From contig NIVC01003124.1 in the NCBI GenBank assembly GCA_002269645.1, positions 1 to 64,000 of the forward strand: 64,000 bases of DNA. The letters run 5' to 3'. Positions 11,901 through 36,019 of this stretch are shown piece by piece. The notes beneath the pieces are model-generated. The model was not told the DNA's origin and did no database searches. It saw only the letters and a list, made by a program, of their open reading frames with translations. This DNA comes from Macrostomum lignano. Its lineage: Eukaryota. The translations under genes were made by a program, and so were the position numbers. Each line of letters opens with the position of its first letter. The stretch's first letter is position 1.

Positions 11901-12630
11901 CTGAATCTCCCTCCTGTTTCCCGGGCTATGGGCACCCTGGCGCAATGCCTTCGGCGACTTCGGTAGATTTTAAGAGTAGATTTTTTACGGACACGTGACT
12001 CTACAGACTCTATAAGTATTCTAAACTGGGACATTTTTAGCCACTCACTCGTCTACACGGGCTATTTTATTTTATGGTGTGGTGCAGACTGGAGGCGGAT
12101 TTGGATCAATTGACGCGAAAATTTGGACATGACCAATTATCTCCCTCCTTGAATGTAATTAACACCTTTACGTATAATCCAACTTGTCTTGTTTGTGCCT
12201 CGCAGTTCTACGAGGATGTAGCTGCTGATCAACCAGCAAATCGCGGGGTTAGTTTTTAATTACTTAATTACCTGTAATTATCAATTAGATTTATTTGGAT
12301 TGGTCACAATTTAGTCCGACTCTATCTAACAAACCTGGTAATATTGTCAGCGGTGGACAGGTGTAATAAGTATAGTTATCTATTATCTAATCAGATAATT
12401 ATTTGATAAAAGATTCCTACACGTCAGTAGAAACTAATTACATGTACTCAGTAGTGTGTTGAATTACACTCTAATTACATGTATTAGCAATGTTATCTGT
12501 CGTTTAAATAGCCGGGGTCTGGGTGTTATGCTGGCTAATGGCCATGAGTGGCTCGTATTTAAGGAAGAGAATTTATATTTTGCATTGATTTTCAAGACAT
12601 TGTCTTTAGAAAATTTCTTTGTTATTCAAA

Positions 12631-15600
12631 ATGGAGCAGTTATCTATTGTTTACCTGTTGATTGTGGCCATTCAACTGCTCCCTGCACCTGTTGCTGGGC
12701 AATTTCCTGTGGCCTGCTTGAGCAATTCTACTCAGCCTAATGCCGTGTGTTGCCCTGCGCCTCAAGGTGAGCAACCAGTGATATTCCTTGCACTCTACCA
12801 GAGATATCCCCTGCACTCTACCAGTGATATACGCTGCACTCTACCAGTGATATACGCTGCACTCTACCAGTGATATCCCCTGCACTCTACCAGTGATATC
12901 CCCTGCACTCTACCAGTGATATCCCCTGCACTCTACCAGTGATATTCCCTGCACTCTACCAGTGATATCCCCTGCACTCTACCAGTGATATCCCCTGCAC
13001 TCTACCAGTGATATCCCCTGCACTCTACCAGTGATATCCCCTGCACTCTACCAGTGATATCCCCTGCACTCTACCAGTGATATCCCCTGCACTCTACCAG
13101 TGAAATTCCTTGCACTCTACCAGTGATATCCCCTGCACTCTACCAGTGATATCCCCTGCACTCTACCAGTGATATCCCCTGCACTCTACCAGTGATATCC
13201 CCTGCACTCTACCAGAGATATCCCCTGCACTCTACCAGTGATATACCCTACACTCTACCAGTGAAATTCCTTGCACTCTACCAGTGATATCCCCTAAACT
13301 CTACCAGTCATATCCCCTACACTCTGCCAGTGACCCTTCACTAGACTGACTCCACTATTGACTTAAACTACCCTAACCCTACATGTATACCATTTGACTC
13401 ACCTTAAAATCCAACAGTGACCTACCTTACAATTGACCCTTGGCATCCTAGCAACCCTCCATGAGCTTCGACTTCTCAGCAATTCACCCCGAGCCTTAAC
13501 ATCTCAACACCAAGTGCACCAGCAATACAAAAGTAACTATATTCAGCTTGTCCGCACACGAAGGTTCCGCCGTCCCCTGCGGCGGCCCCCAGCGCGGCGC
13601 CTGCGTCGCCATAACGACGGCCGCTGTAGACGAAGATCCGCCCAGAGAAGAGCTGCGCAATGACGACCGGCTGTCCTGGCCGCTGAGATTCTTCGCCTTC
13701 GCCTGCCAGTGCCGGCCGGCGTTCTGGGGCGCCGACTGCGGCGAATCCGCGCCGTTGCGCCCTCGATTGCGCAAAAACGCGCTTAATATGAGCGCAGAGG
13801 AGCGACTGCTGCTGCGACAGGTGGATGCTTAATTAGCGTTGATGTCTTATGCTTTTGCTCCATGTTTTCTAAACTAACAATTTTTTTTAGCTTTAATTTT
13901 ACTCATTCTAAATTCGAACCCGCGACTTTCGGGTTGAAGATTTCAGCGCGATAGACCACTGACCCTCTGTCACAAACAATCAATACGAACGTTAGTTATA
14001 TGCGTAAAGTTTATATAAACTATACTTAAATAACTCTATCACAAGTGAGACTCGAACTCGCGTCCTTTAGATTATTGGTTAAATCCGCTAGACCACCATG
14101 CTACGATCTGCCTCGCTTCTTATGGAATATTTCAAACTGTAGAATCAATCGCTAAACACCACAAGGTTCTGGTTGCATCAAAGAACGAGTCGAGCGGTTG
14201 GGCCGTCCTGAACATCAGCAGCTCAGCCAATGGCGACCCGGCTACGCCAGACAAAGTCTCTTTCGTAAACGTCAGCGTATACGACCTCTTAGTCTATCTG
14301 CATCTGTACTCATCGAGGAGCACCCTGCTCGAGCCGGTGATGCCTGACGAAGGAGCTGCTGGCGAGGACGGCGGCGAAGAGGGCTCGTGTCCGAGGTCCC
14401 GCCATCAGCTGGACTTTGCTCACCGAGGTCCGGGGTTCCTGCCCTGGCATCGGCACTATCTTCTACTAGCGGAGGCCCTATTCGCCAACATTGCTAAGAG
14501 CCGCTTTGGAGCCGAGGACTTCTCGTTACCCTATTGGGACTGGACTGGAAAGTCTGTTTGCGACGTCTGCACCAGCGATCTGGTCGGGCCAGTTGGAAAT
14601 GCAACCGGTAGATTAAAAGTGTACATTCGATTGGGAGTCCTTGGGATTGGAGATGGAGTGGATTGGATTGGAGTGCATTGAAATTTGCACAGTGAGAATG
14701 GGAATCGTGAAGGTAATTACACAGTAATAGAGAAGGTGATTACACAGCAATAGAGAGGGTGATTACACAGTATTAGAGAAGGTGATTACACAGCAACAGA
14801 GAAGGTGATTACACAGTAACAGAAGGGGTGATTACACAGTAATAGAGAGACTGATTACACAGTAATAGAGAAGGTGATTACACAGCAACAGAGGGTGATT
14901 ACACAGTAACAGAAGGGGCGATTACACAGTAATTCACCGCCAATCCCAACCATCCCCACACAGCGGACGACTCAGATCCCGATTCAGGTTTTGTCGGCGG
15001 CGATTTTGCCAACTTTCGCGCCTTCTGCCCGCGCCGTTCATCCCCGGGCGCCTGTCACACCTGCGACCCGGCCAAGTTCCAGGACGTCGGCGGTGACGGA
15101 AGCAACGCGGAGCCATTGTGGAGGTCGTACAATGCCGATTTTTTCAATCAAGACAATGGTGATGCTGGCGGATTGCCCAGCATCGAGGAGACAGCCTACC
15201 TGCTGGTCAATGCAAGCCGCTATGACTCACCACCCTACAATCAGTCCGCAGCCAATGACAGCTTCCGGAACCTTCTGGAAGGCTTTGTCAACAGTAGCGG
15301 AGATTTCAGCACCGCTGGTCGGCAGTTTATGCATAACCTGGTGAGAATTGACGAATTGCAATTTGGAACTGATGACACCCATTTTAGGGGTAATGACACC
15401 CATTTTAGGGGTAATGACACCCATTTTAGGGGTAATGACACCCATTTAGGAGGCAATGACACCCATTTTAGGGGTAATGACACCCATTTTAGGGGCAAAG
15501 ACACACAATTAGGAAGCAACGACACCCATTTTAGGGGCAATGGCACCCATTTTAGAAGTAATGGCATCCTTTTTGGAGATAATGAATCCTAATTTGGAGG

Positions 15601-17296
15601 TAATGACGCCCATTTTGGAGGTAATGACACCCAATTCGTTTTAAAAAATTTTTTCAACGTTGACAAACATTTTGACACATTTGGTGTGCAACATTTCACC
15701 CTGACAGGTGCACAGCTACATGAGAGGCACCTGGCTAGACGTGGCCCTCAGCCCGAACGATCCGCTATTCTGGCTTCATCACTGTTTCGTTGACAAACTA
15801 TTCGAAGTGTGGCTTCGATCCAGCCCGGATGCAGCCAATCCCGATAAAAATCTGCCAGTCGATGGTGCACCGGTTGGTCACTCGCGTCGCTCAAATATGG
15901 TGCCATTTTTTCCGCCCGTGACCGTGGCTGACCGGTTTGCCAGGTCCGACAGCTTGGGATTTGGTTACGACACCCTGCAGCTGGAGACCGGGCTGGATGC
16001 TCTGGCGCTGAGGGGAGCTCCGGCCGCTGCTGAGTCTGGTAGAGTAGGAAAGGGGTAGGGTCGGTTGAGTAGGTTAGCTAGGGTTTTGGGTAGGGTAGGG
16101 TAGGTTTTGGGTAGGGTTTCGGTAGGTTTTTGGTAGGGTTTCGGTAGGTTTTGGGCAGGGTTTCGGTAGGTTTTGGGTAGGGTTTCGGTAGGTTTTGGGT
16201 AGGGTTTCGGTAGTCTTTGGGTAGGGTTTGGTAGGTTTTGGGTAGGGTTTTGATAGGCTTTGGGCAGGGTTTCGGTAGGTTTTGGGTAGGGTTTCGGTAG
16301 GTTTTGGGTAGGGTTTCGGTAGGCTTTGGGTAGGGTTTCGGTAGGTTTTGGGTAGGGTCTCGGTAGGTTTTGGGTAAGGGTTTCGGTAGGCTTTGGGTAG
16401 GGTTTCGGTAGGTTTTGGGCAGGGTTTCGGTAGGTTTTGGGCAGGGTTTCGGTAGGTTTTGGGTAGGGTTTCGGTAGTCTTTGGGTAGGGTTTTGGTAGG
16501 CTTTGGGCAGGGTTTCGGTAGGTTGTGGGTAGGGTTTCGGTAGGTTTTGGGTAAGGTTTCGGTAGGTTTTGGGTAGGGTTTCGGTAGGCTTTGGGTAGGG
16601 TATCGGTAGGCTTTGGGTAGGGTTTTGGTAGGTTCTGGGTAGGGTTTCGGTAGGTTTTGGGTAGGGTTTCGGTAGGCTTTGGGTAGGGTTTCGGTAGGTT
16701 TTGGGTAGGGTTTCGGTAGGTTTTGGGTAGGGTTTCGGTAGGTTTGGGTAAAGTAGGTAGGTTTTAGGTAGGGTTTCGATAGGGTGAGTAGGGTTTGGGT
16801 AGGATGGGTAGTATGGTCAAGGACTACGAGACTAGACTCATTCTATAACGAAGTTTTTCTAGTGGTCCTTGAGTTGGGTAGATATAGGTGGAATTTTGAT
16901 GAGTAGAGTCAAATCAAATTCAGATAAAATCAATAAGATAGTAGATGAAATCAAGATAAAAATGGGATTTTAAAACCCTCAAACCCTCACCTTGCTGACC
17001 CAGGCATTCTGGCAGTGCCAGCCGACTCACCTCTGGCCGGGTGGAACTTCCGCCTAATATCGCTGGTAGAATTTCTCGTGCTTGCCGTCTGCCTGTGCGT
17101 CATTGCCGGTTGGGCTTGCTTTATCCTGAGACAGCGTCGAGGACTTGGCGGTCAGTATCGCCAAGTGGAAGGTCCAGATCCAACAGCAGACGGCGGCAGT
17201 GACCATCAGCGACAAGAGGAGAAAGAGAAGGAGGAAGAGACGCCTCTGATTGCTGATAAGCGGTCTGGGAAACGAAAAATTCCGATCTACGTTTGA
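12631..17296 (+). CDS. TYR: Tyrosinase, type I membrane (TYR/TYRP family), 6 exons
   Basis: Exons 12631-12766, 13564-13820, 14166-14607, 14964-15340, 15708-16038, 17004-17296 with consistent phases. Signal peptide + QFPVAC..CCP; Cys-rich domain DDRLSWPLRFF..CQC; CuA (YLHLYS, DFAHRGPGFLPWHR); CuB (MHNLVHSY, SPNDPLFWLHHCFVD); TM helix; cytoplasmic EETPLI. Confidence 0.9.
12773..13335. repeat. 23-bp minisatellite in tyrosinase intron 1
   Basis: Unit GATATCCCCTGCACTCTACCAGT beginning a few nt after the donor site. Confidence 0.95.
13912..14105 (-). mobile_element. Two tRNA-like (A/B-box) heads in tyrosinase intron 2
   Basis: Minus strand CGTAGCATGGTGGTCTAGCG...GAGTTCGAGTC (14105-14047) and GGTCAGTGGTCTATCGCG...GGGTTCGAAT (13964-13912); no clean cloverleaf. 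Confidence 0.5.
14710..14935. repeat. ~23-bp minisatellite in tyrosinase intron 3
   Basis: Unit GTGATTACACAGTAATAGAGAAG. Confidence 0.9.
15370..15635. repeat. 21-bp minisatellite in tyrosinase intron 4
   Basis: Unit AATGACACCCATTTTAGGGGT. Confidence 0.9.
16045..16800. repeat. 22-bp G/T-rich minisatellite in tyrosinase intron 5
   Basis: Unit GGGTTTCGGTAGGTTTTGGGTA. Confidence 0.95.
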
Positions 17297-17974: not shown

Positions 17975-18181
17975 TCAGGACTCTGGTCTGCAGCCCAGCA
18001 ACTGCAGCAGGTAGGTGGCCACGGACTCGAATCCTGACGGCATGCCGTAGTGCTTCTCGGCCTCGAGGTTAAAGGAGGTGTTGCTGTTGATGTCGATCAC
18101 ACAGGCTTCGCCTGATGAGTTCCTGATGAACTCAAACGCTATGTTCTCTGCGTCTGTAGCCTGCGTGAGATAGATTAGATG

Positions 18182-18276
<95 letters not shown>

Positions 18277-18353
18277 GGATAGATAGATAGATAGATAGAT
18301 GGACAGACAGACAGGCAGACAGACAGACAGAGACAGAGGACAGACAGACAGAA

Positions 18354-18414
<61 letters not shown>

Positions 18415-18421
18415 TACACTA

Positions 18422-18454
<33 letters not shown>

Positions 18455-18483
18455 GGCAGGCAGACAGACATACAGACAGAGAC

Positions 18484-18524
<41 letters not shown>

Positions 18525-21500
18525 GCAGACAGACAGACAGACAGAAAGACAGACAGGCAGACAGACAGACAGACAGACAACACTCACCTGAATGAACTCC
18601 TCCATGCGCTGCCGAATCGGGTGCTCAAATTGCCGCGACAGGCGATAGTTTTCCACCTTGTTGGCGCAGGGGCACATGTTGAAGCCCGGACTCTCTGGGT
18701 CCACCTGTTGAATGCAAAAGATTTCAGTCTATATCTGCATGCATGCACCATACTCTATACTTTCTACTTGTAAGTAGTCGAACTCTCACAGCAACTATAA
18801 AAGACTGACCAATATTTCAGCGAGGTACAGAAACTTCTTCCCGACAAATTCCGCTCGATAGAATCCGCAACTCCTATCCAGGTACTCCTGGAACAGGTAT
18901 AGCCCAGTTGGACATGGATTCTCCGCGAAATAGGTCGTCCGCCCAGACTCGAATTCGTCAACGGTGTCGAATAGTCGAACTCCGCTGCCGGAACCGCCGC
19001 GATCCGGTTTCAGGATGAAGGGCGCTGGAAGCTGGGCCGATACAAGTGACGAAGTCCTGACACTAACAGTGCCGATGAGAGTTCTTGGCACTGGGAGCCC
19101 GACTTTTCGGCACTGGAGGAGTTTGATGTTTTGTAATCTTTATGGTCTTTACATGTACGGAGTCTTGTTGGGTGCCCCTGTTTCCTAGTTGGAGCCCCTG
19201 TCTCCTAGTTGGCGCCCCTGTCTCCTAGTTGGCGCCTCTGTTTCCTAGTTGGCGCCCCTGTTTCCTAGTTGGCGCCCCTGTTTCCTAGTTGGCGCCCCTG
19301 TCTCTTGGTGGGCGCCCCTGTTTCCTAGTTGGCGCCCCTGTTTCCTAGTTGGCGCCCCTGTCTCTTGGTGGGCGCTCCTGTTTCCTAGTTGGCGCCCCTG
19401 TTTCCTAGTTGGCGCCCCTGTTTCCTAGTTGGCGCCCCTGTCTCTTGGTGGGCGCTCCTGTTTCCTAGTTGGCGCCCCTGTCTTCTAGTTGGCGCCCCTG
19501 TTTCTTGGTGGGCGCCCCTGTCTCCTAGTTGGCGCCCCTGCCTCTTGGTGGGCGCCCCTGTCTCCTAGTTGGCACCCCTGTCTCTTGGTGGGTGCCCCTG
19601 TCTTCTAGTTGGCGCCCCTGTTTCCTAGTTGGCGCCCCTGCCTCTTGGTGGGCGCCCCTGTCTCCTAGTTGGCGCCCCGTCTCCTAGTTGGCGCCTCTGT
19701 CTCCTGGTGGGTGCCCCTGTCTTCTAGTTGGCGCCCCTGTTTCCTAGTTGGCGCCCCTGCCTCTTGGTGGGCGCCCCTGTCTCCTAGTTGGCGCCCCTGC
19801 CTCCTAGTTGGCGCCCCTGTCTCCTAGTTGGCGCCCCTGTCTCCTAGTTGGCGCCCCTGTCTCCTAGTTGGCGCCCCTGTCTCCTAGTTGGCGCCCCTGT
19901 CTCCTAGTTGGCGCCCCTGTCTCCTAGTTGGCGCCCCTGTCTCCTAGTTGGCGCCCCTGTCTCCTAGTTGGCGCCCCTGTCTCCTAGTTGGCGCCCCTGT
20001 CTCTTGGTGGGCGCCCCTGTCTCTTGTTGGGCGCCCCTGTCTCCTAGTTGGCGCCCCTGTCTCTTGGTGGGCGCCCCTGTCTCCTAGTTGGCGCTACTGT
20101 TTTCTAGGTGGCGCCCCTGTTTCCTAGTTGGCGCCCCGTCTCCTAGTTGGCGCCCCGTCTCCTAGTTGGCGCCACTGTCTTCTAGTTGGTTGGAAAACCG
20201 ACTGCCACTTCGATAACAGTGCATATGAGCTATATATATGAGAGTCGATATAGTGTTCTCTATATGCTCTGTCGGGACTCGGGTTATATTGTTTCCATCG
20301 CGATTTAAAAAAAAATAGTTTTCTTTATTGTAGCTCGTATATTACGAAACAAAAAATAGTTTTTCCCTATCTAGATATTAATGGCAAACGTTAGCGTAAC
20401 GTATTTTCAACGCACCCTGATCATGCCTATGCTTGGTCGGTACTCGGTAGCTTTCTGATCTTTCGTGTTAACAATTCTTATCTGTTGAATCCGCGGTGCT
20501 AATTAATGTCATGCACCTGCTGCAGTAAAAAAAATAGAGATAAGCAAGAGAGACAGAGAAAATGAAACGAAGAGTGCAGACGACGCGGTGCTTGCGGTGC
20601 TTGCTCGTTGACTGAGGACTCAATATGTGTACTTTTGAGATTTTTGCATTGAGCAGTACAGAGAGCTCTCTATATTTGCTTATCTCTTATCGCGCATCTG
20701 CATGCCTTTGCTCTTGAAGTATTCCATTGCCATCTACTGTGACTTTAGCATCATTCAATACTGACTTTGGCATCATCCAAGACTGTGACTCTGGCATCAT
20801 CCAAGACTGTGACTCTGGCATCATCCAAGACTGTGACTCTGGCATCATCCAATACTGACTTTAGCATCATCCAAGACTGTGACTCTGGCATCATCCAATA
20901 CTGTGACTCTGGCATCATCCAATACTGTGACTCTGGCATCATCCAAGACTGTGACTCTGGCATCATCCAATACTGTGACTCTGGCATCATCCAATACTGT
21001 GACTCTGGCATCATCCAAGACTGTGACTTTAGCATCATAAAAATGTGACTTTAGCATCATAAAAATGTGACTTTAGCATCATTCAATACTGACTTTGGCA
21101 TCATCCAAGACTGTGACTCTGGCATCATCCAAGACTGTGACTCTGGCATCATCCAATACTGACTTTAGCATCATCCAAGACTGTGACTCTGGCATCATCC
21201 AAGACTGTGACTCTGGCATCATCCAATACTGACTTTAGCATCATCCAAGACTGTGATTCTGGCATCATCCAATACTGTGACTCTGGCATCATCCAATACT
21301 GTGACTCTGGCATCATCCAAGACTGTGACTCTGGCATCATCCAATACTGTGACTCTGGCATCATCCAATACTGTGACTCTGGCATCATCCAAGACTGTGA
21401 CTTTAGCATCATAAAAATGTGACTTTAGCATCATAAAAATGTGACTTTAGCATCATCCAAGACTGTGACTTTGGCATCATAAAAATGTGACTTTAGCATC

Positions 21501-23564
21501 ATCCAAGACTGTGACTTTAGCATCATCCAAGACTGTGACTCTGGCATCATCCAAGACTGTGACTCTGGCATCATCCAAGACTGTGACTCTGGCATCATCC
21601 AATACTGACTTTAGCATCATCCAAGACTGTGACTCTGGCATCATCCAATACTGTGACTCTGGCATCATCCAATACTGTGACTCTGGCATCATCCAATACT
21701 GTGACTCTGGCATCATCCAAGACTGTGACTTTAGCATCATAAAAATGTGACTTTAGCATCATAAAAATGTGACTTTAGCATCATCCAAGACTGTGACTTT
21801 GGCATCATAAAAATGTGACTTTAGCATCATCCAAGACTGTGACTCTGGCATCATCCAAGACTGACTTTAGCATCATCCAATACTGACTTTAGCATCATCC
21901 AATACTGACTTTGGCATCATCCAAGACTGTGACTCTGGCATCATCTAAGACTGTGACTTTAGCATCAAAAAAACGTGACTCTAGCATCATTCAATACTGA
22001 CTTTAGCATCATCCAATACTGACTTTAGCATCATCCAATACTGACTTTAGCATCATCCAATACTGACTTTAGCATCATCCAAGACTGTGACTTTAGCATC
22101 ATCCAAGACTGTGACTTTGGCATCATAAAAATGTGACTTTAGCATCATCCAAGACTGTGACTCTGGCATCATCCAAGACTGACTTTAGCATCATCCAATA
22201 CTGACTTTAGCATCATCCAATACTGACTTTGGCATCATCCAAGACTGTGACTCTGGCATCATCTAAGACTGTGACTTTAGCATCAAAAAAACGTGACTCT
22301 AGCATCATTCAATACTGACTTTAGCATCATCCAATACTGACTTTAGCATCATCCAATACTGACTTTAGCATCATCCAATACTGACTTTAGCATCATCCAA
22401 GACTGTGACTTTAGCATCATCCAAGACTGTGACTTTGGCATCATAAAAATGTGACTTTAGCATCATCCAAGACTGTGACTCTGGCATCATCCAAGACTGA
22501 CTTTAGCATCATCCAATACTGACTTTAGCATCATCCAATACTGACTTTGGCATCATCCAAGACTGTGACTCTGGCATCATCTAAGACTGTGACTTTAGCA
22601 TCAAAAAAACGTGACTCTAGCATCATTCAATACTGACTTTAGCATCATCCAATACTGACTTTAGCATCATCCAATACTGACTTTAGCATCATCCAAGACT
22701 GTGACTTTAGCATCATAAAAACGTGACTCTAGGATCATCCAAGACTGACTTTAGCATCATCCAAGACTGTGACTTTAGCAGTATCCAAGACTGTGACTCT
22801 AGCACCATCTATGACCACATGTACATGTAAATAAACCCCATCTGAGCGTAAAACGATGGTTCAATACCATCATCTATCTGATGTGATTGTGATTCTACCA
22901 ATCAGCTGTATCCATGGGACAGAGGTCACAGAGCAGCATATCGATAATCGCGCCTAGCTTAGCATGTCGATCTATAAAAGTGCGTGCCTGAGTACCGTAT
23001 TGGCAACAGCTTGTATGTGCTGAGGAGTTCGCGGAATGGACAGAATTGCTTTAGTGTTGGATGGTTGCGGGACAATGTCGCTGAAGGCATATTTATTAAG
23101 AATTTTCTATTCAGCCGAATATTTTCAACCAGCAACCCGACGCTGCCAGAACGGTAATATTATTGCTTTTAATTGCCGTTTAGGCGTTGGAGAAATGCTT
23201 CAAACGCTCGATTGCTCACCAGTCGAATTTGCTCTGTTTTGCTGCCCTCCATTTCCATGACGTCGCCATTGACAACCCGCCGGTCCCAGGCGGTCAGCCA
23301 GCCAAGGATGACGCGAAACGCTTCAAACGAATTCGGCGCCTGTCGCTGAGCAGCCGAGGCTGAGCAGAAGGCGAAGTACAGCGCCTCGGGCGGCTCGCTG
23401 TCAGCGTCGATGGCCATCTCGGCGGCATGCCAGTAGGTCACCGGCAGATCGGGACATTGGCGCTGCAAATTGGCCACAGTATCTGCTATCCAATGGGCAT
23501 CGTCGAATACAATTATGAGTCCTTTAGAGTACTGCGGTTTGAGTTGGCACGAGTTTGTTGACAT
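17975..23564 (-). CDS. RimK-like / glutathione-synthetase-like ATP-grasp ligase, bacterial type, 4 exons, ~316 aa
   Basis: Exons 23564-23220, 19112-18810, 18704-18588, 18160-17975 (all phase 0, GT-AG). Motifs WDRRVVNG..MEMEGSK, PVPRT, FILKPDRGGSGSGVRLF, LFQEYL, YRAEFVG, FNMCPC, VIDINSNTSFN follow the ATP-grasp order. Confidence 0.85.
18168..18579. repeat. Compound (GATA)n/(GACA)n microsatellite filling ATP-grasp intron 3
   Basis: (GATA)n ~18168-18300 followed by (GACA)n ~18301-18579. Confidence 0.97.
19170..20190. repeat. 20-bp minisatellite in ATP-grasp intron 1
   Basis: Unit GGCGCCCCTGTYTCCTAGTT, ~50 copies. Confidence 0.97.
20742..22810. repeat. 22-24-bp minisatellite with 318-bp higher-order repeat in ATP-grasp intron 1
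   Basis: Unit CTGTGACTCTGGCATCATCCAAGA; marker TCATCTAAGA at 21941, 22259, 22577. Confidence 0.95.
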
Positions 23565-24299
23565 GTTTCTGATGTGCTCCGTCTCAAAGCAGAAATGCAA
23601 TATTTGATAGCATAAAGTTAATTAAGTAGGTTATTAATGCACTGCCAATATCCAGCGCCGCGTTTTAAATAGCAGAGGTTTGGGGTTGCTCTGAATTCGT
23701 GCATACTTGCATGGTTGGTTGATTCGATGTTCATGCGGCTTGTATGCAGTTCTGTCACTAGTGTCACTGTATGCACGCTGTCTTTTACTTAATTTACGAT
23801 TTTCAAAGCTTTCAAATGTGCCGCGCCTCTGAGGGAGGGTGAGGGCTTGGCTGAGTACACATGCATGCGCATGGGAGGCAAGCCGCGATTGAAAAGACTA
23901 GATAAGAGAGAGACCAAAAATATAAAGCCATGAACAGAACAGAAAAAGAAGATCGCGCGCCCGGTGTGTTTTTGGAAGTCAAAATAGGGGCTCGACTCGA
24001 CGTTTATGCATGGTGTGGACACGAAAGGTTATTTATATTCACTGAACACATCGTAAAACCTGACCACATGTAAGATCAGACTCGACGACTTCATGAAAAT
24101 GATGTCTGTGTGTTTTTGCCGGACAAAATTTCGATGATGATCCAGACGTATTGCTATCCCTGACATCCATACCTATTTAACGGGTCCACTTGCCACATGC
24201 AACCGGACCTTTGCCAACCAGAACGTTCGTTAAATAAGCCGCGGGATGAAGTTAATAATTGCCTTCAAAGCCATTTACACTCGATCGCGGGGGGGGGGG

Positions 24300-24660
24300 G
24301 GCGTAGCCCAGCGGTAGCGCAGCTGCTCTGATGTGCCAGCGACCCAGGCTCGATTCCAAGTGCAGGCACATTCATTTGGGGCTGAATTGGAATCTCGGCT
24401 TGGCTCTGCTCGTGCAAGTAACGGCCTTGAGAGCCAACCCCCCAAGGCGCAGTGAAGTGTACATGCCTAACGATAATATAAAGTTAGGGCCGCTGTACAC
24501 TCCTGTGTGAGTGTGTGCCTGCGTACGTATCCGCGCGCTTGTATGCCTGCTCAGGGGAGTCGGCGGAATGGGCAGTAGTGCCTCTCGCCGGTTGTGTGCC
24601 TATATGTCGCTTAAAGTGCGCCAGGGTGCACACAACCCCCCTGCCTCTAATAAAAAAATA
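24300..24660 (+). mobile_element. tRNA-derived SINE (family 2)
   Basis: A box GGCGTAGCCCAGCGGTAG, B box GGCTCGATTCC, A-rich tail near 24650; body GTGTACATGCC...AAGTTAGGGCCGCTGTACAC...TGTGTGAG shared with 48465-48530 and (reverse) 44880-44930. Confidence 0.75.
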
Positions 24661-26544
24661 ATACACTTGATCGCTAACTCCAAAAGGGAAACGTCGAAAC
24701 TTATACTACGGATCCACAGAGCGTAGTAGTGAAGAATGTCCATTCTGCCTCTCAGATGTTAAGTATGCGAATTGAAGCGTTTCATCTGTGACATGCCTTG
24801 CGTGCCTTTACTCGGGACAGGAAAGGCACGCAAAAAATAGAAAAAAAAGGCTCGGAAAAAATACTTATTTTCCAGCGACGCCAATAGCTAGACGTCGGAA
24901 AGCGTCGGCCAACGTCACCGACGTCAGATGGCTGCTGTATGGCATGTACGGGAACGCCCTTAGTTCAATCCCCATAAAGCTAGTCATGATAGCATGTGCA
25001 TGTATACATGCATGTACATGCGCAATGGCAAGATCCAAAAATACATTCATTACATGCTTGCAGATCGTCGTGACCAGTCGATCATCACAAATAAATTGTC
25101 ATGGGCCATGAATATACATGTAGTCCAGCAATGATCGATCCGTTTTAAACTGGCAAAGTCGGCTGGCCATTCCCTCGTTCCTTGCCATCTATACAAACGA
25201 CTTTATATGGCTGCAGTTACACACTGCAGGCATGCAGTTTGAGCTGCATACATGTAATTTAATTTGACCCAGCGCTCTGGCCGGTTGACCCGACATGTTC
25301 CCTTGTACAGGAAGCGAGAAAAAATTAGCTCCGTTTGATCGGAGCAGACTAAAATTCTTTAAAGTGCCTTTAATTTGGATCGAATAATAAAAATGCATGT
25401 TTAGAATTTTGATATATAATAAAAAAACTGTGCCTCGCCGGCCACACGCAAATCGCGCGCGCAATTCAATGATGTCGCAGCTTGTACGTCGCTGTGATTT
25501 CGCCAGGCGAGTTATCGCCGCATATCGCTTCGCAATAGTAAAGCAAACCGTTCGCGAAATCTTTGGTTACGTGGGTACATACATGTAATTTGCGTCCCGT
25601 GGAGGGATCGACCGCACTATAATTTAAGTGATTTGGTTGTTGACGACATGATGCCGTATTCGATCAACCGTCAGAGCACAGAAGACGCACGGTCTGTTCC
25701 CCCATCATCGCTCTGACAGGTCATATGCAGCATAGTGTATAAGTGTATTCTACCGAATATGGCGTAGGCAACACTCTTGCACGAGGGCATGCAGAAATAA
25801 TAATTAAGCTTGCTAAATGTACTTTACACAGAAGTCTTTGCTAGGATTTTTTAATGGTGCAAACTACAAATTAGCTCGACTGCGCATGTTTGAAGATAAT
25901 TTTTTATCTTCAGCACAACTTATGTTCTCTATAGTTCATTCAGGAGATAACAGAGATTTAGAGAGATTACTTGTGTAAAGTTGTAATAATGTGAAGGATA
26001 AAGTATTAGTTTTACGGTTTTTCGTGACTTAGCATCAAGTCAACATGCACAAATAAATGCACAAATAAATTTTTGTGAATTATAGACAAAGAAATTAGCT
26101 TAGTATCAAAGGACATTTTGCTTCTCAAAATAGTGTTTAAAATATCGTTCCAGTCAAGCTGCTTTGTTAAAGTGTATTAAGGTCTGAGAGATATTTTTAA
26201 CATTTAAAAAGCATTTTACTTTATATAACATTTTAAATATCTCGAAGCTGAATTTTTTGTCACGAAGTCGCTAGACTGTGAACATTTTAGCAACTTATAA
26301 TAGAAGTCGTAGTAAGCAAGTTTCGAGGATACCGTAGGAGTGGTCTTAATAAAAAGTGGCTTTTCAAATAATATAAAGACTTTGAGTGATATGATTGATT
26401 TACAGCAAAACTAATAAAACTAAAAGTAGGCCTACTAGTAACGTCTAGTTTTCTTTTACATCAACATCCGCCTAACCTTCGCCTCCAGGATTCTATCTAT
26501 TTACTATTCTGTCGATTTGATCTAAAAAATATCTGCTTCAAAAA

Positions 26545-29500
26545 ATGCCTCTCAAGCGAGGCAAATTTTCAGCTCGATTTCCTGCTGTAAGTTGGCTTAT
26601 TCTCTATGACTATGGCCTTTTATTTTTAGGCCCAATATATACTCAACATGTAACATTGAGTTCAATGCATTCATTAGACTGGGCCTAAACTAATGTCTTA
26701 GTCTTGCTGTGACTGATTAGAGAAATAGGCTTAGGTCTAAAGTAGAATATATATTATAGGCTTACCTTACCTCTAGTTTTACAAAAATAGGCCTAGTTTG
26801 CATTATTAACTTTTCATGATCTCTATGACTGAGTCATGTATGATTATGACAAACAATTGATCCATTTTGGCAAAGTTTTTTTCTATGTTGCAATTAAGTG
26901 GGCCTACCAAATGAAAAAATAGTAGGCCTAGCTGCCTAGTTAAAATAGCTAGCAACTTTATAGATTATATTATTAGTGTTGAGCATTTCCATTACCAAGT
27001 AACTTGCAAATGGTAACGCAAGTTACTTTTTTGTAAAGTGTTCCTTAAGCAAGTTACTTTCCTATCTTGGTAACAGTAAGTTACTCATTTTGAAATTCTG
27101 GTTAGGGCCATAGTTACTTTGTAACAATTGCAATATTTAAATTTAAAACTGATATGCTTGGCTATTATGCCAGTTGTCACATTTTTTAGCATTTTTCATT
27201 CCTAAATACAAAATTAAGTGAATAGAATTTTATAGTATTGTGCTATAATTAATAAAAAATACTTGAAAAATGTTTTTACTTTGTTAATATAATAGGCATG
27301 ATTGCTCTCACTGAAATTATCCCTCTACTGATACCAAAGTTGATGTAGTGGTTACTTCTGTCTTTATAAATAATCTCACAATGCTACCAGCTGTTACAGG
27401 GCTAATTTAATTAATGTATTTTTGCACAAATGTACTTATATTGATTGGTAGCATGACTATTCCTCTATCTACTTCTATATTGGTACCCCATTGGAGCAAA
27501 TAGGGGTTTTTGCAGACAACGTCCGGCGCGCTTGTGAAAAATTGCCTGCGCGGCTGCGCAAATGTTACTAGCATATATGTAGATCTGCACGCAGCGCGCA
27601 CCATGCACCTTGTGCGCGTAATGTTACTAGCATATATGTAGATCTGCACGCAGCGCGCACCATGCACCTTGTGCGCGTAATGTTACTAGCATATATGTAG
27701 ATCTGCACGCAGCGCGCACCATGCACCTTGTGCGCGTAATGTTACTAGCATATATGTAGATCTGCACGCAGCGCGCACCATGCACCTTGTGCGCGTAATG
27801 TTACTAGCATATATGTAGATCTGCACGCAGCGCGCACCATGCACCTTGTGCGCGTAATGTTACTAGCATATATGTAGATCTGCACGCAGCGCGCACCATG
27901 CACCTTGTGCGCGTAATGTTACTAGCATATATGTAGATCTGCACGCAGCGCGCACCATGCACCTTGTGCGCGTAATGTTACTAGCATATATGTAGATCTG
28001 CACGCAGCGCGCACCATGCACCTTGTGCGCATAATGTTACTAGCATATATGTAGATCTGCACGCAGCGCGCACCATGCACCTTGTGCGCGTAATGTTACT
28101 AGCATATATGTAGATCTGCACGCAGCGCGCACCATGCACCTTGTGCGCGTAATGTTACTAGCATATATGTAGATCTGCACGCAGCGCGCACCATGCACCT
28201 TGTGCGCGTAATGTTACTAGCATATATGTAGATCTGCACGCAGCGCGCACCATGCACCTTGTGCGCGTAATGTTACTAGCATATATGTAGATCTGCACGC
28301 AGCGCGCACCATGCACCTTGTGCGCGTAATGTTACTAGCATATATGTAGATCTGCACGCAGCGCGCACCATGCACCTTGTGCGCGTAATGTTACTAGCAT
28401 ATATGTAGATCTGCACGCAGCGCGCACCATGCACCTTGCGCACATAACGTAGCGTATGTAGATTTGGTATAACAAACAGCTGTGCACCCTTGTGCCTTTC
28501 AGGCTTTCACTAGTGTCTTGTATGCTTTATAAATTTACATATGTACATGTACATGCAGGTGCAATGCTACATGAGTGAATGCCAGTGCCTGATCTGCACC
28601 CACACCTTGTTCACCTATATACATTTATGTCATGTACTATATAATACATTTATACGTACATGTAGGTGCGATGCTACATGTAAAGCAGTTAGGCATGTAC
28701 CCGTGCCTTGCACCCGCACCTTGTGCGCTTATAAGTTCAGTATACATTTATGTATTAAAGTACAATGTTACTAGCAGTGCTCACCCATGCCTGCTTAATT
28801 GCACCTGCGCCTTGTGCGCTTACTCAAGTACATTTAACATGTATGAGCCAGCAGCCAATTCTACCCTTAATGGACTTTGCAGATTTGGTATTGTATATTT
28901 AGATGATTTAGTATATTAAGATAAGATTTAGTATATTGTGAAAGATAGTTGGATTGGTAGCTACTTAATTTTTTGTGTCTAGCAATTTAATGCAATGATA
29001 TAATAGCTAATTGGGACGAGAAGCGGAGCAAAGACATAGAAGCAAAGAGAGAGTGGCTACTGACTGCAAGTGTATATATAGAGATTACAACACCCCTAAT
29101 CCAAAACCTAGACAAACCCCCACGTAATGTGCAATGTACAAATAATCGATAAAATATATCATGCAAGAATATCATACGTCAGTATATGTACAAATATGGA
29201 ACTGCTTTACAAGAAATAATATAACGATATGAATGAAATACAAATAATACAGATAGTCATGTTTGAATAGTTTATTTCAAAACAATATGCAATTCTACCG
29301 GTGCATGCCTATGTTCGATGCACAATGTAACGTAAACATGTGTACAACGTAATTTACTCGTGTTAGATTTTCTTAGAAAAATTCAAATTTTGTAGGCTTA
29401 ATTTAGTCGTCACTGACATCCGTAAATCTAGCGCTCCTATCCAACGAATGATAGCATCCCTGAACTGGCTGCACCGCAAAATTCAACGCGGAAAAATTCT

Positions 29501-32500
29501 TGTGAAGGCATACCAAGTTGCCAAACGAATCCACGACAGGCGCGCTAGAAAGACAAAATCTTTCAGCAAAACACGTTTTGTCTCGTCCAGCTTCACCATG
29601 GTGCAGGCTACTGTAACGGAGCTCCGAATTTGGCTGACGACACTAAACGAGACGCCTCTGTCTCGCAAAAACCGCGAAGTTTTAGCGTACCTGCAGTCCA
29701 CGGCTTTTGTTACTGAGTTGCTGATCTTCAGCGAAGTGATGAAACTGTTCTGTGCAACTATGCTACGCTGCCAGGATCTACAGCTGCCTGTCTGGAGCAT
29801 GGTCGAGGATATCTCGAGGCTGTCTGTGGAGCTGGAGCAAAAAAAACTGCTTTATCCCAATTACACGAGCTCGCGAACATGGATAGAGAGCTCGATTCAT
29901 TTGCGTCAGCTACTGCAGCAAATCATGATCTCCGGCAGCATCTGCCACTGCTGTTTACCAACTTAACTGACCCACAGCAGGGTGTCTACCACGACGTTGA
30001 TTTGGCCACTACCACCACTGTTCCTCGGTGTATTTTAGATCGTAGGTGCCGGCACGTCAGTGACAGTGAGGACTCGAGCAGCGACTCAGAGTCAGATTCT
30101 GAATTGGAGGTTAGGCACGCTGGTCGCAACGTCAGATCAACTTTTAAATCGGCCTTGTCAGCAGGCGTTGAGTTGGTGACAGCCTTAGGTGACCGTCTCA
30201 GTGTACGAACGTCCCACTCCATCCCGAGTTTTATTAACCTTCTGTCGTCGGCGTTTGGCCTTGCTGGTTATGTTGGAGCCATGTGCGGTCATCTTTGTCG
30301 TGGTTCTTCCGGCGCCACAGTGTTTTTGCGGCATGAAGCGCACTTCGTGGTCTATGGTCGAAATGCTTTCAGCATGGCCGCTGAAGCCGCTCGTTCACGA
30401 CGCAGTCTGCGCGACCTATTCGATTCAGCCGACTTGCAACCAGTTGATCTGCACACCCTCTGGCGCGACACGCTGAAACAGATTGTCTGGAGTGAAGATA
30501 GCACCTCGGCCCACTGTCGGCGAGTGCTTTTCGGTGACACTGTGCCAGACGACCGAGTGCTGACGCTGGCGTTAACCGAAGTGTCAGATGAATTTGCGAT
30601 TGATTTCGGACAAGGACCTGTTAAACTGAAAGTACAGGAACAGGCGTTTATTAAAGCTATGTACAACGACGACCAACTGTACACACGATTTGGCAAGCCA
30701 CTTTGTGCGCTCTTAGATTGGGCCCTTGCCAAGGGCTGCCCTGAGGCCATCGTGGAGAGCTTGTACACTTCGATGGAGCGGCGATGCATGCAAGGCGCAC
30801 TTCAACTGTCTAGTACGCTAGAGTTGCGCACCCGCTTGGCGTGGCATTTACCGCGTACTCTTGCTGCCATACCCACGAATGTACTTGAACGGATTAGTCG
30901 CGAGTGGCTGACGTCGCACCCGGTTACGTTTTTGTCTGCTGGATCAAATAAGCGGAAGCAGGAGGTGCTAGAGCGACTGAAATCTGAAGAAGGTCGTGTT
31001 CGGCTGAAGTAGATTTTATTATACATGATGTATAACATGTTACTGTCACATCATTTAGCTAGCAACGATTTTTTATCTGCCCTCGTTTTCTGTTGTTGTC
31101 CGCTCATCACTGCATGAGAGATGAGACTATTTCTCTAGGCTGCAGAATATAGTTCGACTTGAACGAGTAAGGCCACTTAGGAGCCTGTGGCAGCACGCCA
31201 CTGCTAGTTGAGCTGTATTGTATCCAGTTAAGGCCACTTAGGAGCCTGTGGCTGCATGCCACTGCTAGTTGAGCTGTATTGTATCCAGTTAAGGCCACTT
31301 AGGGGCCTGTGGCTGCACGCCACTGCTAGTTGAGCTGTATTGTATCCAGTTAAGGCCACTTAGGGGCCTGTGGCTGCACGCCACTGCTAGTTGAGCTGTA
31401 TTGTATCCAGTTAAGGCCACTTAGGGGCCTGTGGCTGCATGCCACTGCTAGTTGAACTGTATTGTATCCAGTTAAGGCCACTTAGGGGCCTGTGGCTGCA
31501 TGCCACTGCTAGTTGAACTGTATTGTATCCAGTTAAGGCCACTTAGGGGCCTGTGGCTGCACGCCACTGCTAGTTGAGCTGAGAATTGAGCTGTACAGTA
31601 TTCAGTGAAAACGGATAATCTACATAGACATTGATACTGCATAGATTGAATGCAGCTGAGCTTTACTATAATTTTTTTTTATTTCTGCTTCCAATTTTTA
31701 ATCACACTAAGAAACTGAAAACGCCTTTATCTCGTCTACAGTGAACTTGTTACTTGAATCTTAGCATTTTTTTACTTTGCCAGTTAAGATCTTTTACATG
31801 CATTACAGGTGCAAAATTCTGTGCCTAAATTCTTTTCATTTCTAAGTATATCTATTCAATTTTAGTATAGTTGTTATCACATTTATCATGTTGTGTGAAG
31901 GCAATCTATTGACACGTTGTTATTAAAAGAAAGAGAATTCAATCATATCAGTTTATATTTCAAGTTAGTTGTTCATACTTTTTACGAATGTAGTTTTGTT
32001 TTCAAGTTGGTTTGTTTGTTGTTAACTTTGCTTTTAAGAACTCAAAAAATACTTGTTTGCAATTTTCCACTCCTGATTAGAGTGATTGCGCGTTTGCGCT
32101 CTTTTTCTCAAAACCAATTGCGCACCTGCGCACCTAGCAGGAGTGTCCGCAGCTTTTTTAAATTTGCTCCAATAGGGTATTGGTAGCATCTACTTATCTT
32201 ATTGGTAGCGTCTACATGTACTGTACTCTTTGGCCTGAGTAGTCTAATAGCACTGTTTACTCTATTTACTCTTATAAGTTTTCTCTCAGTCCTGGGTGTT
32301 CCTTGGATCAGAGGGTCATAGCCTTGCACTCTTTCTCTGCCCTGAAGTGGTTTTTCTGTCCTGAGGTGCTTCCTCACTGATTAGTGGGCTTTTTAATACT
32401 ACTTCCAATTTAGGGCTCTAGGAAATGAATAAATGAATAACTACTCTAGGAAATGAATAAGTTTTTAGGAATCTTGCAAATGAGATTTTATAAAACTAGA

Positions 32501-35883: not shown

Positions 35884-36019
35884 TTATTGACGTTCGAATC
35901 GCTGCCGTAAGCTTCTTATTTTATGGCAGAAATTGTAGATTGCTGCTTTTTAGTTTACAAAATCAGTTGATTTGCCGTTCGATTCTAAAATCTTGGGTCC
36001 CTCCATTGCAGGGGGGGGG

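What the first reader, a model, noticed from the sequence alone, without database searches (positions are those of the whole stretch)
17975..23564. Intron-containing ATP-grasp ligase of a bacterial RimK-like family: candidate horizontal gene transfer
The spliced 316-aa protein follows, over its whole length, the bacterial 'RimK family alpha-L-glutamate ligase-like' proteins as I recall them (approximately W..AHGRRVVNG..VLELEVSK, P.T, FITKHNQGGKGLGVRLF, LQEY, RAEFVGG.FLY, FELCPAD, YDVNTNTNYN), rather than animal RIMKLA/B, carnosine synthase or eukaryotic glutathione synthetase. Three phase-0 GT-AG introns and flanking animal genes argue against contamination and for a domesticated gene. Its product would be an unknown peptide or amino-acid conjugate in an animal.
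Basis: partly seen in the sequence, partly recalled or inferred. Interest (0 to 1): 0.8.

Follow-up and report, generated by a model that had tools for sequence, protein, structure and literature searches.

The report
Ancient patchy animal ATP-grasp ligase gene
This is a real, intact, four-exon flatworm (Macrostomum) gene for an uncharacterised ATP-dependent ligase whose family is mostly bacterial. It is not a recent bacterial import: snails, abalone and amphioxus carry the same gene, and amphioxus shares two of its intron positions.

Summary
On the minus strand, exons 23564-23220, 19112-18810, 18704-18588 and 18160-17975 join through three GT-AG phase-0 introns into a 316-aa ORF. It is 97% identical to Macrostomum lignano BOX15_Mlig013055g1, whose model comes from RNA-seq.

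The protein is a complete ATP-grasp ligase. The AF2 model has pLDDT 90.5 and its best structural matches are ArgX, LysX and RimK. All catalytic residues are kept. dN/dS against the paralogous copy is 0.11.

The family is uncharacterised and is labelled 'alpha-L-glutamate ligase' in at least 592 bacterial species. It scores far below the RimK family cut-offs.

The HGT reading is only partly supported. Orthologues exist in Haliotis, Batillaria and Branchiostoma, and the animal sequences form one clade (NJ bootstrap 94-99%). Two of the three Macrostomum introns match amphioxus introns in position and phase. The gene was therefore already intron-bearing in the bilaterian ancestor and was later lost widely.

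The deeper origin is unresolved. The animal clade is never placed with a specific bacterial clade. In most analyses its sister group is protist or giant-virus-like sequences.

The substrate is unknown. Domain fusions in homologues point to acidic amino acids or dicarboxylates and to thiol redox control.

The parts
23220..23564 (-). Exon 1 (codons 1-115). It encodes the N-terminal pre-ATP-grasp domain, including the family motif CSASAAQR (S68, S70, R74), W89 and RRVVNG. It starts at the ATG at 23564 and the donor is CTG|GTGAGC.
   Evidence: 100% tblastn match to aa 1-115.
19113..23219 (-). Intron 1 (4107 nt, GT-AG, phase 0). Its position and phase are identical to the amphioxus intron after L150. 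It is filled by two minisatellite arrays: 19174-20189 (20 bp x 51) and 20736-22809 (24 bp x 90, with a 318-bp higher-order unit).
18810..19112 (-). Exon 2 (codons 116-216). It encodes the central ATP-binding domain: GLPVPRT, ILKPDRGGSGSGV (K150 and the Gly-rich loop), LFQEY (Q190) and YRAEFVG (R201, E203).
18705..18809 (-). Intron 2 (105 nt, GT-AG, phase 0). Its position and phase are identical to the amphioxus intron after Q257.
18588..18704 (-). Exon 3 (codons 217-255). It encodes the Cys-containing loop GFNMCPC, which is the shortened form of the bacterial FELCPADxC...CP loop, and the start of the C-terminal domain.
18161..18587 (-). Intron 3 (427 nt, GT-AG, phase 0). This position was seen only in Macrostomum. 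It consists almost entirely of (AGAT)n/(AGAC)n microsatellite (18168-18579).
17975..18160 (-). Exon 4 (codons 256-316 plus the stop codon at 17975-17977). It encodes the Mg/ATP-binding residues of the C-terminal domain: E265 (FEF), and D278 and N280 (VIDIN).

Best explanation
**Identity.** The locus is a functional Macrostomum gene for a soluble ATP-grasp carboxylate-amine ligase. The enzyme has three domains and no signal peptide or transmembrane segment. It belongs to an uncharacterised family that is a distant relative of RimK, LysX and ArgX.

**Mechanism (inferred from the superfamily).** ATP-Mg binds between the central and C-terminal domains, using K109, K150, Q190, E265, D278 and N280. 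A substrate carboxylate is phosphorylated to an acyl-phosphate. An amine then attacks it to give an amide or peptide bond. The most likely substrates are an acidic amino acid or dicarboxylate, or a Glu-ending peptide or protein. The Cys-containing loop (CPC in animals, CPADxC...CP in bacteria) may lie over the active site and be redox-sensitive.

**Evolution (shown here).** The gene is not a recent flatworm acquisition. It is one member of an animal clade that also includes gastropods and amphioxus. That clade already had at least two of its introns in the last common bilaterian ancestor and has since been lost from most animals.

**Deeper origin (unresolved).** The family is overwhelmingly bacterial. 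However, the animal clade tends to group with protist and giant-virus-like members rather than with any particular bacteria.
For: **Gene model and expression**
- The gene model is exact.
- The protein is 97% identical to the M. lignano model P0001, which has the same four exons.
- The GenBank annotation holding P0001 was derived from an RNA-seq transcriptome assembly (PMC5730564).
- Against the paralogous copy, dS = 0.10, dN = 0.011 and dN/dS = 0.11.

**Fold and active site**
- The AF2 model has pLDDT 90.5 and pTM 0.89.
- The top Foldseek PDB matches are ArgX, LysX and LysX/ArgX (TM 0.7-0.8), followed by Ddl, PsnB and RimK.
- A family profile against PDB sequences gives RimK 4e-10, LysX 8e-9 and ArgX 1e-7.
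- The family-invariant catalytic residues are kept in all animal sequences.

**Animal orthologues and phylogeny**
- Orthologues occur in Branchiostoma and in four Haliotis species and Batillaria.
- Animal monophyly has NJ bootstrap support of 0.94-0.99.
- All animal sequences share the substitutions N152D, G198, Y200 and I277; D184T and L116A/C are shared by most of them.
- Two intron positions are identical in position and phase between the flatworm and amphioxus genes, verified at nucleotide level.

**Non-bacterial relatives**
- A Paramoeba protein (P0140) belongs to the family.
- One homologue lies on a protist-like contig (L013).
- Others lie on contigs of densely packed, intronless genes with mostly unrecognised products. 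These carry an AEP_C962R primase and RNR (L003), an uninterrupted RPB1 (L010), or RNR (L012).
- The sister of the animal clade is composed only of such sequences in 72-78% of NJ bootstraps.
- Y200 and I277 are derived states shared between animals and these groups.

**Substrate hints from domain fusions in homologues (sequences)**
- Na+:dicarboxylate symporter (SDF).
- Mitochondrial carrier.
- A thioredoxin domain inserted inside the Cys loop.
- Glutaredoxin.
- FAD/NAD reductase.
Against: - No biochemical data exist for any member of the family, and bacterial gene neighbourhoods are not conserved. The substrate proposal therefore rests only on analogy and on a few fusion proteins.
- Macrostomum has diverged at N-domain positions that are nearly invariant elsewhere: HEN has become FDD and NRMSASSHTR has become AFCSASAAQR. 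Its specificity may differ from that of other members.
- Batillaria's three introns are at other positions and the Haliotis CDS is intronless. The shared-intron argument therefore rests on one species pair.
- The sister-group result is weak and method-dependent. Support falls to 53% with the slowest half of the sites. Under Dayhoff-6 recoding it is 26%, against 42% for a sister made only of 'core' sequences. Long-branch attraction cannot be excluded.
- Only distance trees could be built.
- Most homologues are unlabelled metagenome proteins.
Confidence: 0.7

Rival explanations
1. Lineage-specific HGT: a bacterial gene entered the Macrostomum lineage relatively recently and gained introns there.
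For: The family is overwhelmingly bacterial. The top non-animal hits by E-value are alphaproteobacterial proteins at 32-37% identity. No homologue was found in other flatworms.
Against: The best non-Macrostomum hit is amphioxus (E 1.6e-48, against 1e-36 or weaker for all non-animal hits). The animal clade has 94-99% bootstrap support. Two introns are shared with amphioxus in position and phase. Orthologues lie on chromosome-scale mollusc and amphioxus scaffolds among animal genes. Identity to any bacterium is only about 35%.
Confidence: 0.04
2. A single ancient HGT directly from a bacterium into a stem animal before the bilaterian radiation, followed by intron gain and massive loss. Under this view the protist and giant-virus branches are separate acquisitions.
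For: The distribution across animals is patchy, covering three phyla. The family is present in at least 592 bacterial species. With Dayhoff-6 recoding, 42% of bootstraps give an all-'core' sister group. The window protein is more similar to bacterial members (1e-36 to 1e-39) than to the divergent virus-like group (1e-16 to 1e-19).
Against: No specific bacterial sister clade is recovered; the best single candidate reaches at most 14%. Derived residues Y200, I277 and D152 and the CPC loop are shared with protist and virus-like groups but are rare (1-5%) in the core set. 72-78% of standard bootstraps give a sister group made only of eukaryote- or virus-type sequences.
Confidence: 0.3
3. Independent acquisitions in each animal lineage, for example through giant viruses or from marine microbes, which would give the patchy distribution without massive loss.
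For: All carriers are marine or intertidal invertebrates. Giant-virus-like contigs carry related genes. The Haliotis CDS is intronless and Batillaria's introns are at unique positions.
Against: The animal sequences are monophyletic and share animal-only substitutions. The two introns shared between flatworm and amphioxus are very unlikely to coincide by chance: my estimate is roughly 2e-5 for random placement and about 2e-3 if sites are ten-fold restricted. No close relative was found in IMG/VR or BFVD.
Confidence: 0.06
4. Contaminant, assembly artefact or decaying pseudogene.
For: None beyond the bacterial look of the protein.
Against: The gene has spliceosomal introns filled with the same minisatellites as the rest of the window. 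It is flanked by eukaryotic genes. A second, collinear copy exists in an independent assembly. The ORF is intact, the catalytic residues are kept and dN/dS is 0.11.
Confidence: 0.01

Closest known systems
Uncharacterised bacterial family annotated 'alpha-L-glutamate ligase' or 'ATP-grasp domain-containing protein' (e.g. Planococcus maritimus P0291, Lottiidibacillus patelloidae WP_094925755.1, Pelagibius, Stellaceae and Acetobacteraceae MAGs)
   Same: The alignment is full-length (84-97% coverage, 30-37% identity). The three-domain layout is the same. The invariant residues are shared: S68, S70, R74, W89, N99, K109, Q112, K150, G155, G157, Q190, R201, E203, Y211, C227-P228, E265, D278 and N280.
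   Different: The animal proteins have N152D (KPDRGG in place of KPNRGG) and, in most, D184T. The Cys loop is shortened from CPADxC...CP to CPC. The Macrostomum copy has also lost the HEN and NR..SSHTR motifs. The name in the databases is by similarity only, since bacterial members also score far below the RimK cut-off (52 against 143 bits).
RimK (ribosomal protein S6 poly-alpha-L-glutamate ligase; TIGR00768, PF08443)
   Same: Both have the ATP-grasp fold. RimK is the closest solved relative by sequence profile (E 4e-10, central domain only), with Foldseek TM about 0.68-0.73.
   Different: TIGR00768 scores 28.3 bits against a cut-off of 143.4, and PF08443 scores 11.2 against 21. Identity is about 15%. 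The N-terminal domain motifs and the Cys loop are absent from RimK.
LysX / ArgX (amino-group carrier protein LysW ligases; 3vpd, 3vpb, 5k2m)
   Same: These are the best structural matches to the AF2 model (E about 4e-16, TMt 0.79-0.82). They have the same compact three-domain size of about 280-320 aa.
   Different: Identity is 13-18%. TIGR02144 scores 21.9 bits against a cut-off of 275.6. No LysW-type carrier gene or AAA/arginine pathway context is evident in the window or in the bacterial neighbourhoods.
Animal RIMKLA/RIMKLB, carnosine synthase and eukaryotic glutathione synthetase
   Same: All are ATP-grasp amide-bond ligases present in animals.
   Different: The window protein gives no significant hit to their family models, only sub-threshold generic ATP-grasp hits. 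It belongs to a different, mostly bacterial subfamily.

Membership tests
ATP-grasp superfamily | Three-domain ATP-grasp fold (N, central and C domains enclosing ATP) | tested here: met
   The AF2 model has pLDDT 90.5 and pTM 0.89. 683 PDB matches at E<=1e-3 were found, and all those listed are ATP-grasp proteins.
ATP-grasp superfamily | Conserved ATP/Mg ligands: two Lys, a hinge Gln/Glu, and the acidic-acidic-Asn triad | tested here: met
   K109, K150, Q190, E265, D278 and N280 are conserved in the window protein and in all animal orthologues.
ATP-grasp superfamily | ATP-dependent carboxylate-amine (or thiol) ligation through an acyl-phosphate | not testable with these tools
   This needs an enzyme assay.
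RimK family alpha-L-glutamate ligase (TIGR00768 / PF08443) | Score above the curated family cut-offs | tested here: not met
   TIGR00768 scores 28.3 bits against 143.4 and PF08443 scores 11.2 against 21. Bacterial members of this family also fail (about 52 bits).
RimK family alpha-L-glutamate ligase (TIGR00768 / PF08443) | Adds L-Glu to the C-terminus of ribosomal protein S6 | not testable with these tools
Uncharacterised 'alpha-L-glutamate ligase-like' family (bacterial, with protist, giant-virus-like and animal branches) | Full-length homology with the family-invariant residues | tested here: met
Uncharacterised 'alpha-L-glutamate ligase-like' family (bacterial, with protist, giant-virus-like and animal branches) | Cys-rich loop F-E-L-C-P-A-D-x-C ... 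C-P after the RAEFVGG strand | tested here: inconclusive
   Only C227-P228-C229 (CPC) remains in animals. The same short form occurs in the virus-like group.
Uncharacterised 'alpha-L-glutamate ligase-like' family (bacterial, with protist, giant-virus-like and animal branches) | N-domain motifs H-E-N..W and N-R-x-S-x-S-S-H-x-R | tested here: inconclusive
   These are kept in Haliotis, Batillaria and (mostly) Branchiostoma. In Macrostomum they are reduced to FDD..W and AFCSASAAQR, with only S68, S70 and R74 kept.
LysX/ArgX amino-group carrier protein ligases | Equivalog-level sequence score and a LysW carrier partner | tested here: not met
   TIGR02144 scores 21.9 bits against 275.6. No carrier gene is present in the neighbourhoods. 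The similarity is structural only.
Horizontally acquired bacterial gene in an animal | Integrated in the host genome (introns, host flanking genes, not contamination) | tested here: met
Horizontally acquired bacterial gene in an animal | Nested with support inside a bacterial donor clade | tested here: not met
   NJ bootstraps never give a specific bacterial sister above 14%. The sister is of eukaryote or virus type in 53-78% of bootstraps, and in 26% under Dayhoff-6 recoding. Only distance methods were available, so this is a weak test.
Horizontally acquired bacterial gene in an animal | Restricted to the recipient lineage and absent from other animals | tested here: not met
   Orthologues occur in Mollusca and Cephalochordata, with introns shared with amphioxus. 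The distribution across Metazoa is nevertheless very patchy.

The most novel reading that the evidence does not exclude
The animal gene belongs to a eukaryote and giant-virus branch of this ligase family, marked by Y200, I277 and the CPC loop. It reached the pre-bilaterian animal lineage from a protist or giant-virus gene pool rather than directly from bacteria. It makes a still unknown small peptide or amide metabolite, or a protein C-terminal modification, in a few marine invertebrates. Its activity is gated by a redox-active Cys loop, the same loop into which some protist homologues have inserted a whole thioredoxin domain.
Probability: 0.2. Interest if true: 0.7.

Novelty: new member of a known kind. 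Interest (0 to 1): 0.45.

Why it matters
Claims of bacterium-to-animal gene transfer are often made from 'bacterial-looking' proteins. This case shows how intron positions and wider sampling change the story. The gene is old in bilaterians, survives in only a few phyla (flatworm, gastropods, amphioxus) and has protist and giant-virus-like relatives.

The family has no characterised member in any organism, although it occurs in hundreds of bacterial species. Macrostomum lignano supports RNAi and transgenesis. It is therefore a practical animal system for finding the product of this ligase and for testing whether the Cys loop is a redox switch.

If the product is a new peptide metabolite or protein modification, it would add a pathway that model animals (vertebrates, flies, nematodes) appear to lack: no homologue from any of them turned up in the searches.

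Tried and rejected
**Searches for viral relatives**
- IMG/VR viral-contig scans with two alignments found nothing. Only one peptide pattern could be used.
- A BFVD fold search found only generic ATP-grasp proteins at 17% identity or less.
- The Mimiviridae early-promoter motif AAAATTGA is not clearly enriched in the virus-like contigs.
- Relaxed Pfam scans of their large ORFs found no capsid or packaging hallmarks in the 10-kb flanks. 'Giant-virus-like' therefore rests on the primase, RNR, an uninterrupted RPB1 and a density of genes with no recognised product.

**Functional inference from bacterial context**
- Two single loci and a clustering of neighbours over 80 genomes show no conserved operon.
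- The only recurrent neighbour is a luciferase-like monooxygenase, found in 12 of 80 loci and only in Bacillales.

**Taxonomic labelling of metagenome homologues**
- Cluster look-ups gave no names for 20 of 30 proteins.
- The third homology search returned only 13 unnamed hits.
- Accession searches identified only LFIK01, which is a soda-lake metagenome. SRR12008146 was not found.

**Literature**
- No paper was found on this family in animals or on Mlig013055.

**Readings rejected**
- Contamination, pseudogene, RIMKLA/B orthologue and LysX equivalog.

Full report
**1. The observation**

Reading the minus strand of 17975-23564 gives four exons: 23564-23220, 19112-18810, 18704-18588 and 18160-17975. 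They are joined by three GT-AG introns, all in phase 0, and encode a 316-aa ORF that ends at a TGA at 17977-17975. tblastn finds only this one copy in the window.

Intron 1 (4.1 kb) is filled by two minisatellite arrays, one of 20 bp x 51 and one of 24 bp x 90. Intron 3 is almost entirely (AGAT)n/(AGAC)n. The motifs are literally present in bacterial members such as P0029.

**2. Source organism and whether the gene is real**

The protein is 97% identical to Macrostomum lignano BOX15_Mlig013055g1 (P0001, 316 aa). That gene lies on NIVC01000173.1 with the same four-exon structure. The two loci are collinear over more than 20 kb at 86-94% nucleotide identity, including the intronic minisatellites. 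This fits the duplicated, hidden-polyploid genome of the species.

The GenBank annotation of that assembly was produced from a genome-guided RNA-seq transcriptome assembly (PMC5730564). The identical exon model therefore has transcript support, at least for the sister copy.

Between the two copies dS = 0.10, dN = 0.011 and dN/dS = 0.11, so both are under purifying selection.

The window also holds a UBC E2 domain ORF, C2H2 zinc-finger ORFs and an Rpb2 exon. The sister locus is flanked by a histone-fold (CBFD_NFYB_HMF) gene. Contamination and pseudogene readings are rejected.

**3. What the protein is**

Pfam and NCBIfam give only sub-threshold ATP-grasp hits. RimK PF08443 scores 11 bits against a cut-off of 21. 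TIGR00768 scores 28 against 143, and LysX TIGR02144 scores 22 against 276.

An AlphaFold2 model built on a 101-sequence alignment is confident (pLDDT 90.5, pTM 0.89). It is a complete three-domain ATP-grasp fold. The best PDB matches are ArgX, LysX and LysX/ArgX (TMt about 0.8, 13-18% identity), followed by Ddl, PsnB, RimK and DcsG. A family profile finds RimK (4e-10), LysX (8e-9) and ArgX (1e-7), but only over the central domain.

Residues invariant across the family are all present in the window protein and in every animal orthologue. These are K109, Q112, K150, G155, G157, Q190, R201, E203, Y211, C227-P228, E265, D278 and N280.

By the established ATP-grasp mechanism the enzyme should phosphorylate a carboxylate with ATP and then couple it to an amine. 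This step is inferred, not shown.

**4. The family**

The family is large and uncharacterised:
- The first search returned 130 proteins (E<=1e-3), led by two animal proteins and otherwise made up of metagenome and alphaproteobacterial proteins.
- A profile search returned 1150 proteins at E<=1e-10.
- The exhaustive search returned 487 clusters at 50% identity.
- A scan of GTDB species genomes confirmed at least 592 species. These span Alpha- and Betaproteobacteria, Bacillales, Clostridia, Nitrospira, Vicinamibacterales and others.

NCBI names these proteins 'alpha-L-glutamate ligase', but bacterial members also score far below the RimK cut-off.

Gene neighbourhoods are not conserved. Clustering of neighbours over 80 genomes found only a luciferase-like monooxygenase, present in 12 loci, all Bacillales. 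I found no literature on the family.

**5. Other animals**

The best hit outside Macrostomum is not bacterial. It is an amphioxus protein (Branchiostoma LOC144914130, E 1.6e-48).

The exhaustive search and cluster look-up added four Haliotis species, Batillaria attramentaria and two unlabelled animal-type contigs. These genes sit on large scaffolds, at chromosome scale (23-63 Mb) for Branchiostoma and Haliotis; the amphioxus gene lies among animal genes (Bap31, a threonine-synthase-like gene, an MFS transporter), and nothing informative was called beside the two gastropod genes.

In NJ trees of 127 sequences and 295 columns, the nine animal sequences are monophyletic with 94-99% bootstrap support under several distance corrections. 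All animal sequences share N152D, G198, Y200 and I277. Most also share D184T and L116A/C.

**6. Introns**

At nucleotide level:
- Macrostomum intron 1 (IRL|CRKVGLPVPRT) and the amphioxus intron after L150 (CVL|AKKYGVPVPKT) fall in the same alignment column, both in phase 0.
- Macrostomum intron 2 (RAEFVGKKFLYLAEIL|VDP) and the amphioxus intron after Q257 (RAEFVDGRLLYVFHVQ|VSD) also coincide, both in phase 0.
- Amphioxus has one extra phase-2 intron, and Macrostomum has one extra phase-0 intron.
- Batillaria has three introns at other positions (phases 0, 1 and 2).
- The Haliotis CDS is intronless.

Two exact coincidences out of three introns are very unlikely by chance. My estimate is roughly 2e-5 for random placement and about 2e-3 if usable sites are ten-fold restricted.

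The simplest reading is that an intron-bearing gene was present in the protostome-deuterostome ancestor. It was later lost in most lineages, and its introns turned over in gastropods, possibly through a retrocopy.

**7. Deeper origin**

Many homologues are not bacterial:
- One is a Paramoeba atlantica protein.
- One group lies on a protist-like contig that carries fragmented kinase, MORN and IFT122 genes (L013).
- Two groups lie on contigs of up to 143-337 kb made of densely packed, intronless genes with mostly unrecognised products. These contigs carry an AEP_C962R primase and RNR (L003), an uninterrupted 1674-aa RPB1 and a metacaspase (L010/L011), or RNR, JmjC, DSPc and thioredoxin genes (L012). 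That pattern suggests giant viruses. However, no capsid hallmark lay in the flanks, and IMG/VR and BFVD gave no close relative.

The animal clade groups with these sequences in most analyses. Its sister consists only of eukaryote- or virus-type sequences in 72% of bootstraps with all sites, 78% with the slowest 75% of sites and 53% with the slowest half. Under Dayhoff-6 recoding the figure falls to 26%, against 42% for an all-'core' sister. No particular bacterial clade is ever favoured.

Derived states are shared between animals and these groups:
- Y200 is found in 100% of animals, 75-77% of the protist and virus-like groups and 5% of core sequences.
- I277 is found in 100% of animals, 88-100% of two eukaryote/virus-type groups and 1% of core sequences.
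- D152 is also shared with part of the virus-like group.
- The three-residue shortening of CPADxC to CPC is shared with the virus-like group.

I regard the deeper origin as unresolved, with a lean towards a eukaryote- or virus-associated branch. Long-branch attraction is a real alternative, and only distance methods were available.

**8. Function**

The substrates are not known. Three lines give weak direction.

(a) The closest solved relatives all attach an amino acid to a Glu carboxylate of a protein (RimK, LysX, ArgX).

(b) Fusion proteins among homologues join this domain to several partners:
- a Na+:dicarboxylate/amino-acid symporter (P0149);
- mitochondrial carriers (P0197, P0201);
- an FAD/NAD reductase (P0159);
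- glutaredoxin (P0204);
- a thioredoxin domain with a WCxxC site, inserted inside the Cys loop between CPADSC and the following NCP (P0191, P0192).

(c) The Cys loop itself is conserved: C227 in 94% of core sequences and P228 in 98%.

I therefore commit to an ATP-dependent ligase that acts on an acidic amino acid or dicarboxylate, or on a Glu-ending peptide. I also propose that its Cys loop responds to thiol redox state. My confidence is about 0.8 for the generic chemistry, about 0.4 for the substrate class and about 0.25 for the redox idea.

The Macrostomum copy has lost several N-domain residues that are nearly invariant elsewhere (HEN to FDD; NR..SSHTR to AF..SAAQR). Its acceptor specificity may have shifted, although selection is still purifying.

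**9. Verdict**

The gene does belong to a mostly bacterial family and is very patchy in animals, so a foreign origin at some point is plausible. It is not a Macrostomum-lineage transfer and is not demonstrably nested in bacteria. It is an old bilaterian gene retained in a few phyla.

It is a new, uncharacterised member of a known kind of enzyme. Interest is moderate.

Noticed in passing
window 5478-56749 (about 20 arrays, e.g. 8183-8830, 9422-10029, 10646-11899, 12774-13333, 16082-16803, 27561-28438, 44946-45749, 46826-47942, 53091-54289): The window is packed with minisatellite arrays (periods 15-104 bp, each 0.4-2 kb), often with strong strand composition skew. Several long ORFs lie inside these arrays and had no Pfam hit (8113-9009, 9362-10099, 10889-12034, 34570-35352, 46665-47966). 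They are probably repeat artefacts, not genes.
   Followed up: partly
window 19174-20189 and 20736-22809 (intron 1); 18168-18579 (intron 3): The introns of the ligase gene are built largely of tandem repeats. Intron 1 holds a 20-bp x 51 array and a 24-bp x 90 array with a 318-bp higher-order unit. Intron 3 holds (AGAT)n/(AGAC)n. The paralogous copy L001 carries related arrays in intron 1.
   Followed up: partly
window about 23000-37400 versus L001 (NIVC01000173.1 705556-729636): A second, collinear copy of the whole locus exists in the M. lignano assembly at 86-94% nucleotide identity (97% protein identity). It includes a neighbouring histone-fold (CBFD_NFYB_HMF) gene. This fits the duplicated, hidden-polyploid genome.
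   Followed up: partly
window 4888-5409 (+), 40753-41802 (-), 42651-43373 (-), about 56900-57088 (-): Flanking eukaryotic coding sequence is present: a ubiquitin-conjugating enzyme (UQ_con) ORF, two C2H2 zinc-finger ORFs and an exon matching RNA polymerase Rpb2 domain 3. Their full gene models were not built.
   Followed up: no
homologues P0149, P0159, P0191, P0192, P0197, P0201, P0204: Domain fusions of this ligase occur in protist-like and unlabelled homologues. The partners are an N-terminal Na+:dicarboxylate symporter, C-terminal mitochondrial carriers, a C-terminal FAD/NAD reductase and an N-terminal glutaredoxin. In two proteins a thioredoxin domain (WCxxC) is inserted inside the conserved Cys loop.
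   Followed up: partly
L003, L010/L011, L012 (metagenome and assembly contigs): Divergent homologues sit on contigs of densely packed, intronless genes with mostly unrecognised products. These contigs carry an AEP_C962R primase, RNR small subunit, an uninterrupted RPB1, a metacaspase, and JmjC and DSPc genes. GC content is 50-62%. They look like giant-virus genomes or insertions. L003 comes from a 1.2-million-contig assembly (GCA_017891565.1) whose organism I could not identify.
   Followed up: partly
L002 10973-13662 (Branchiostoma CM033045.1): In amphioxus an RNA_polI_A34 gene is called inside the long first intron, or alternative 5' exon region, of the ligase gene. Isoform X1 carries a 46-aa N-terminal extension from an upstream exon that has no counterpart in other family members.
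   Followed up: no
P0121 (UniProt A0A1I8IX04, M. lignano, 163 aa): A second database model of a M. lignano copy of this gene (about 90% identical) is a truncated, mis-joined version. It skips parts of exons 1, 3 and 4 and changes frame near the start, so it should not be used as the reference protein.
   Followed up: partly
L008 6001-6921 (Haliotis rufescens) versus L009 6001-9330 (Batillaria): The abalone CDS is a single exon, while the Batillaria orthologue has three introns at positions not shared with flatworm or amphioxus. This suggests intron loss, possibly by retrocopy, and regain within gastropods.
   Followed up: partly
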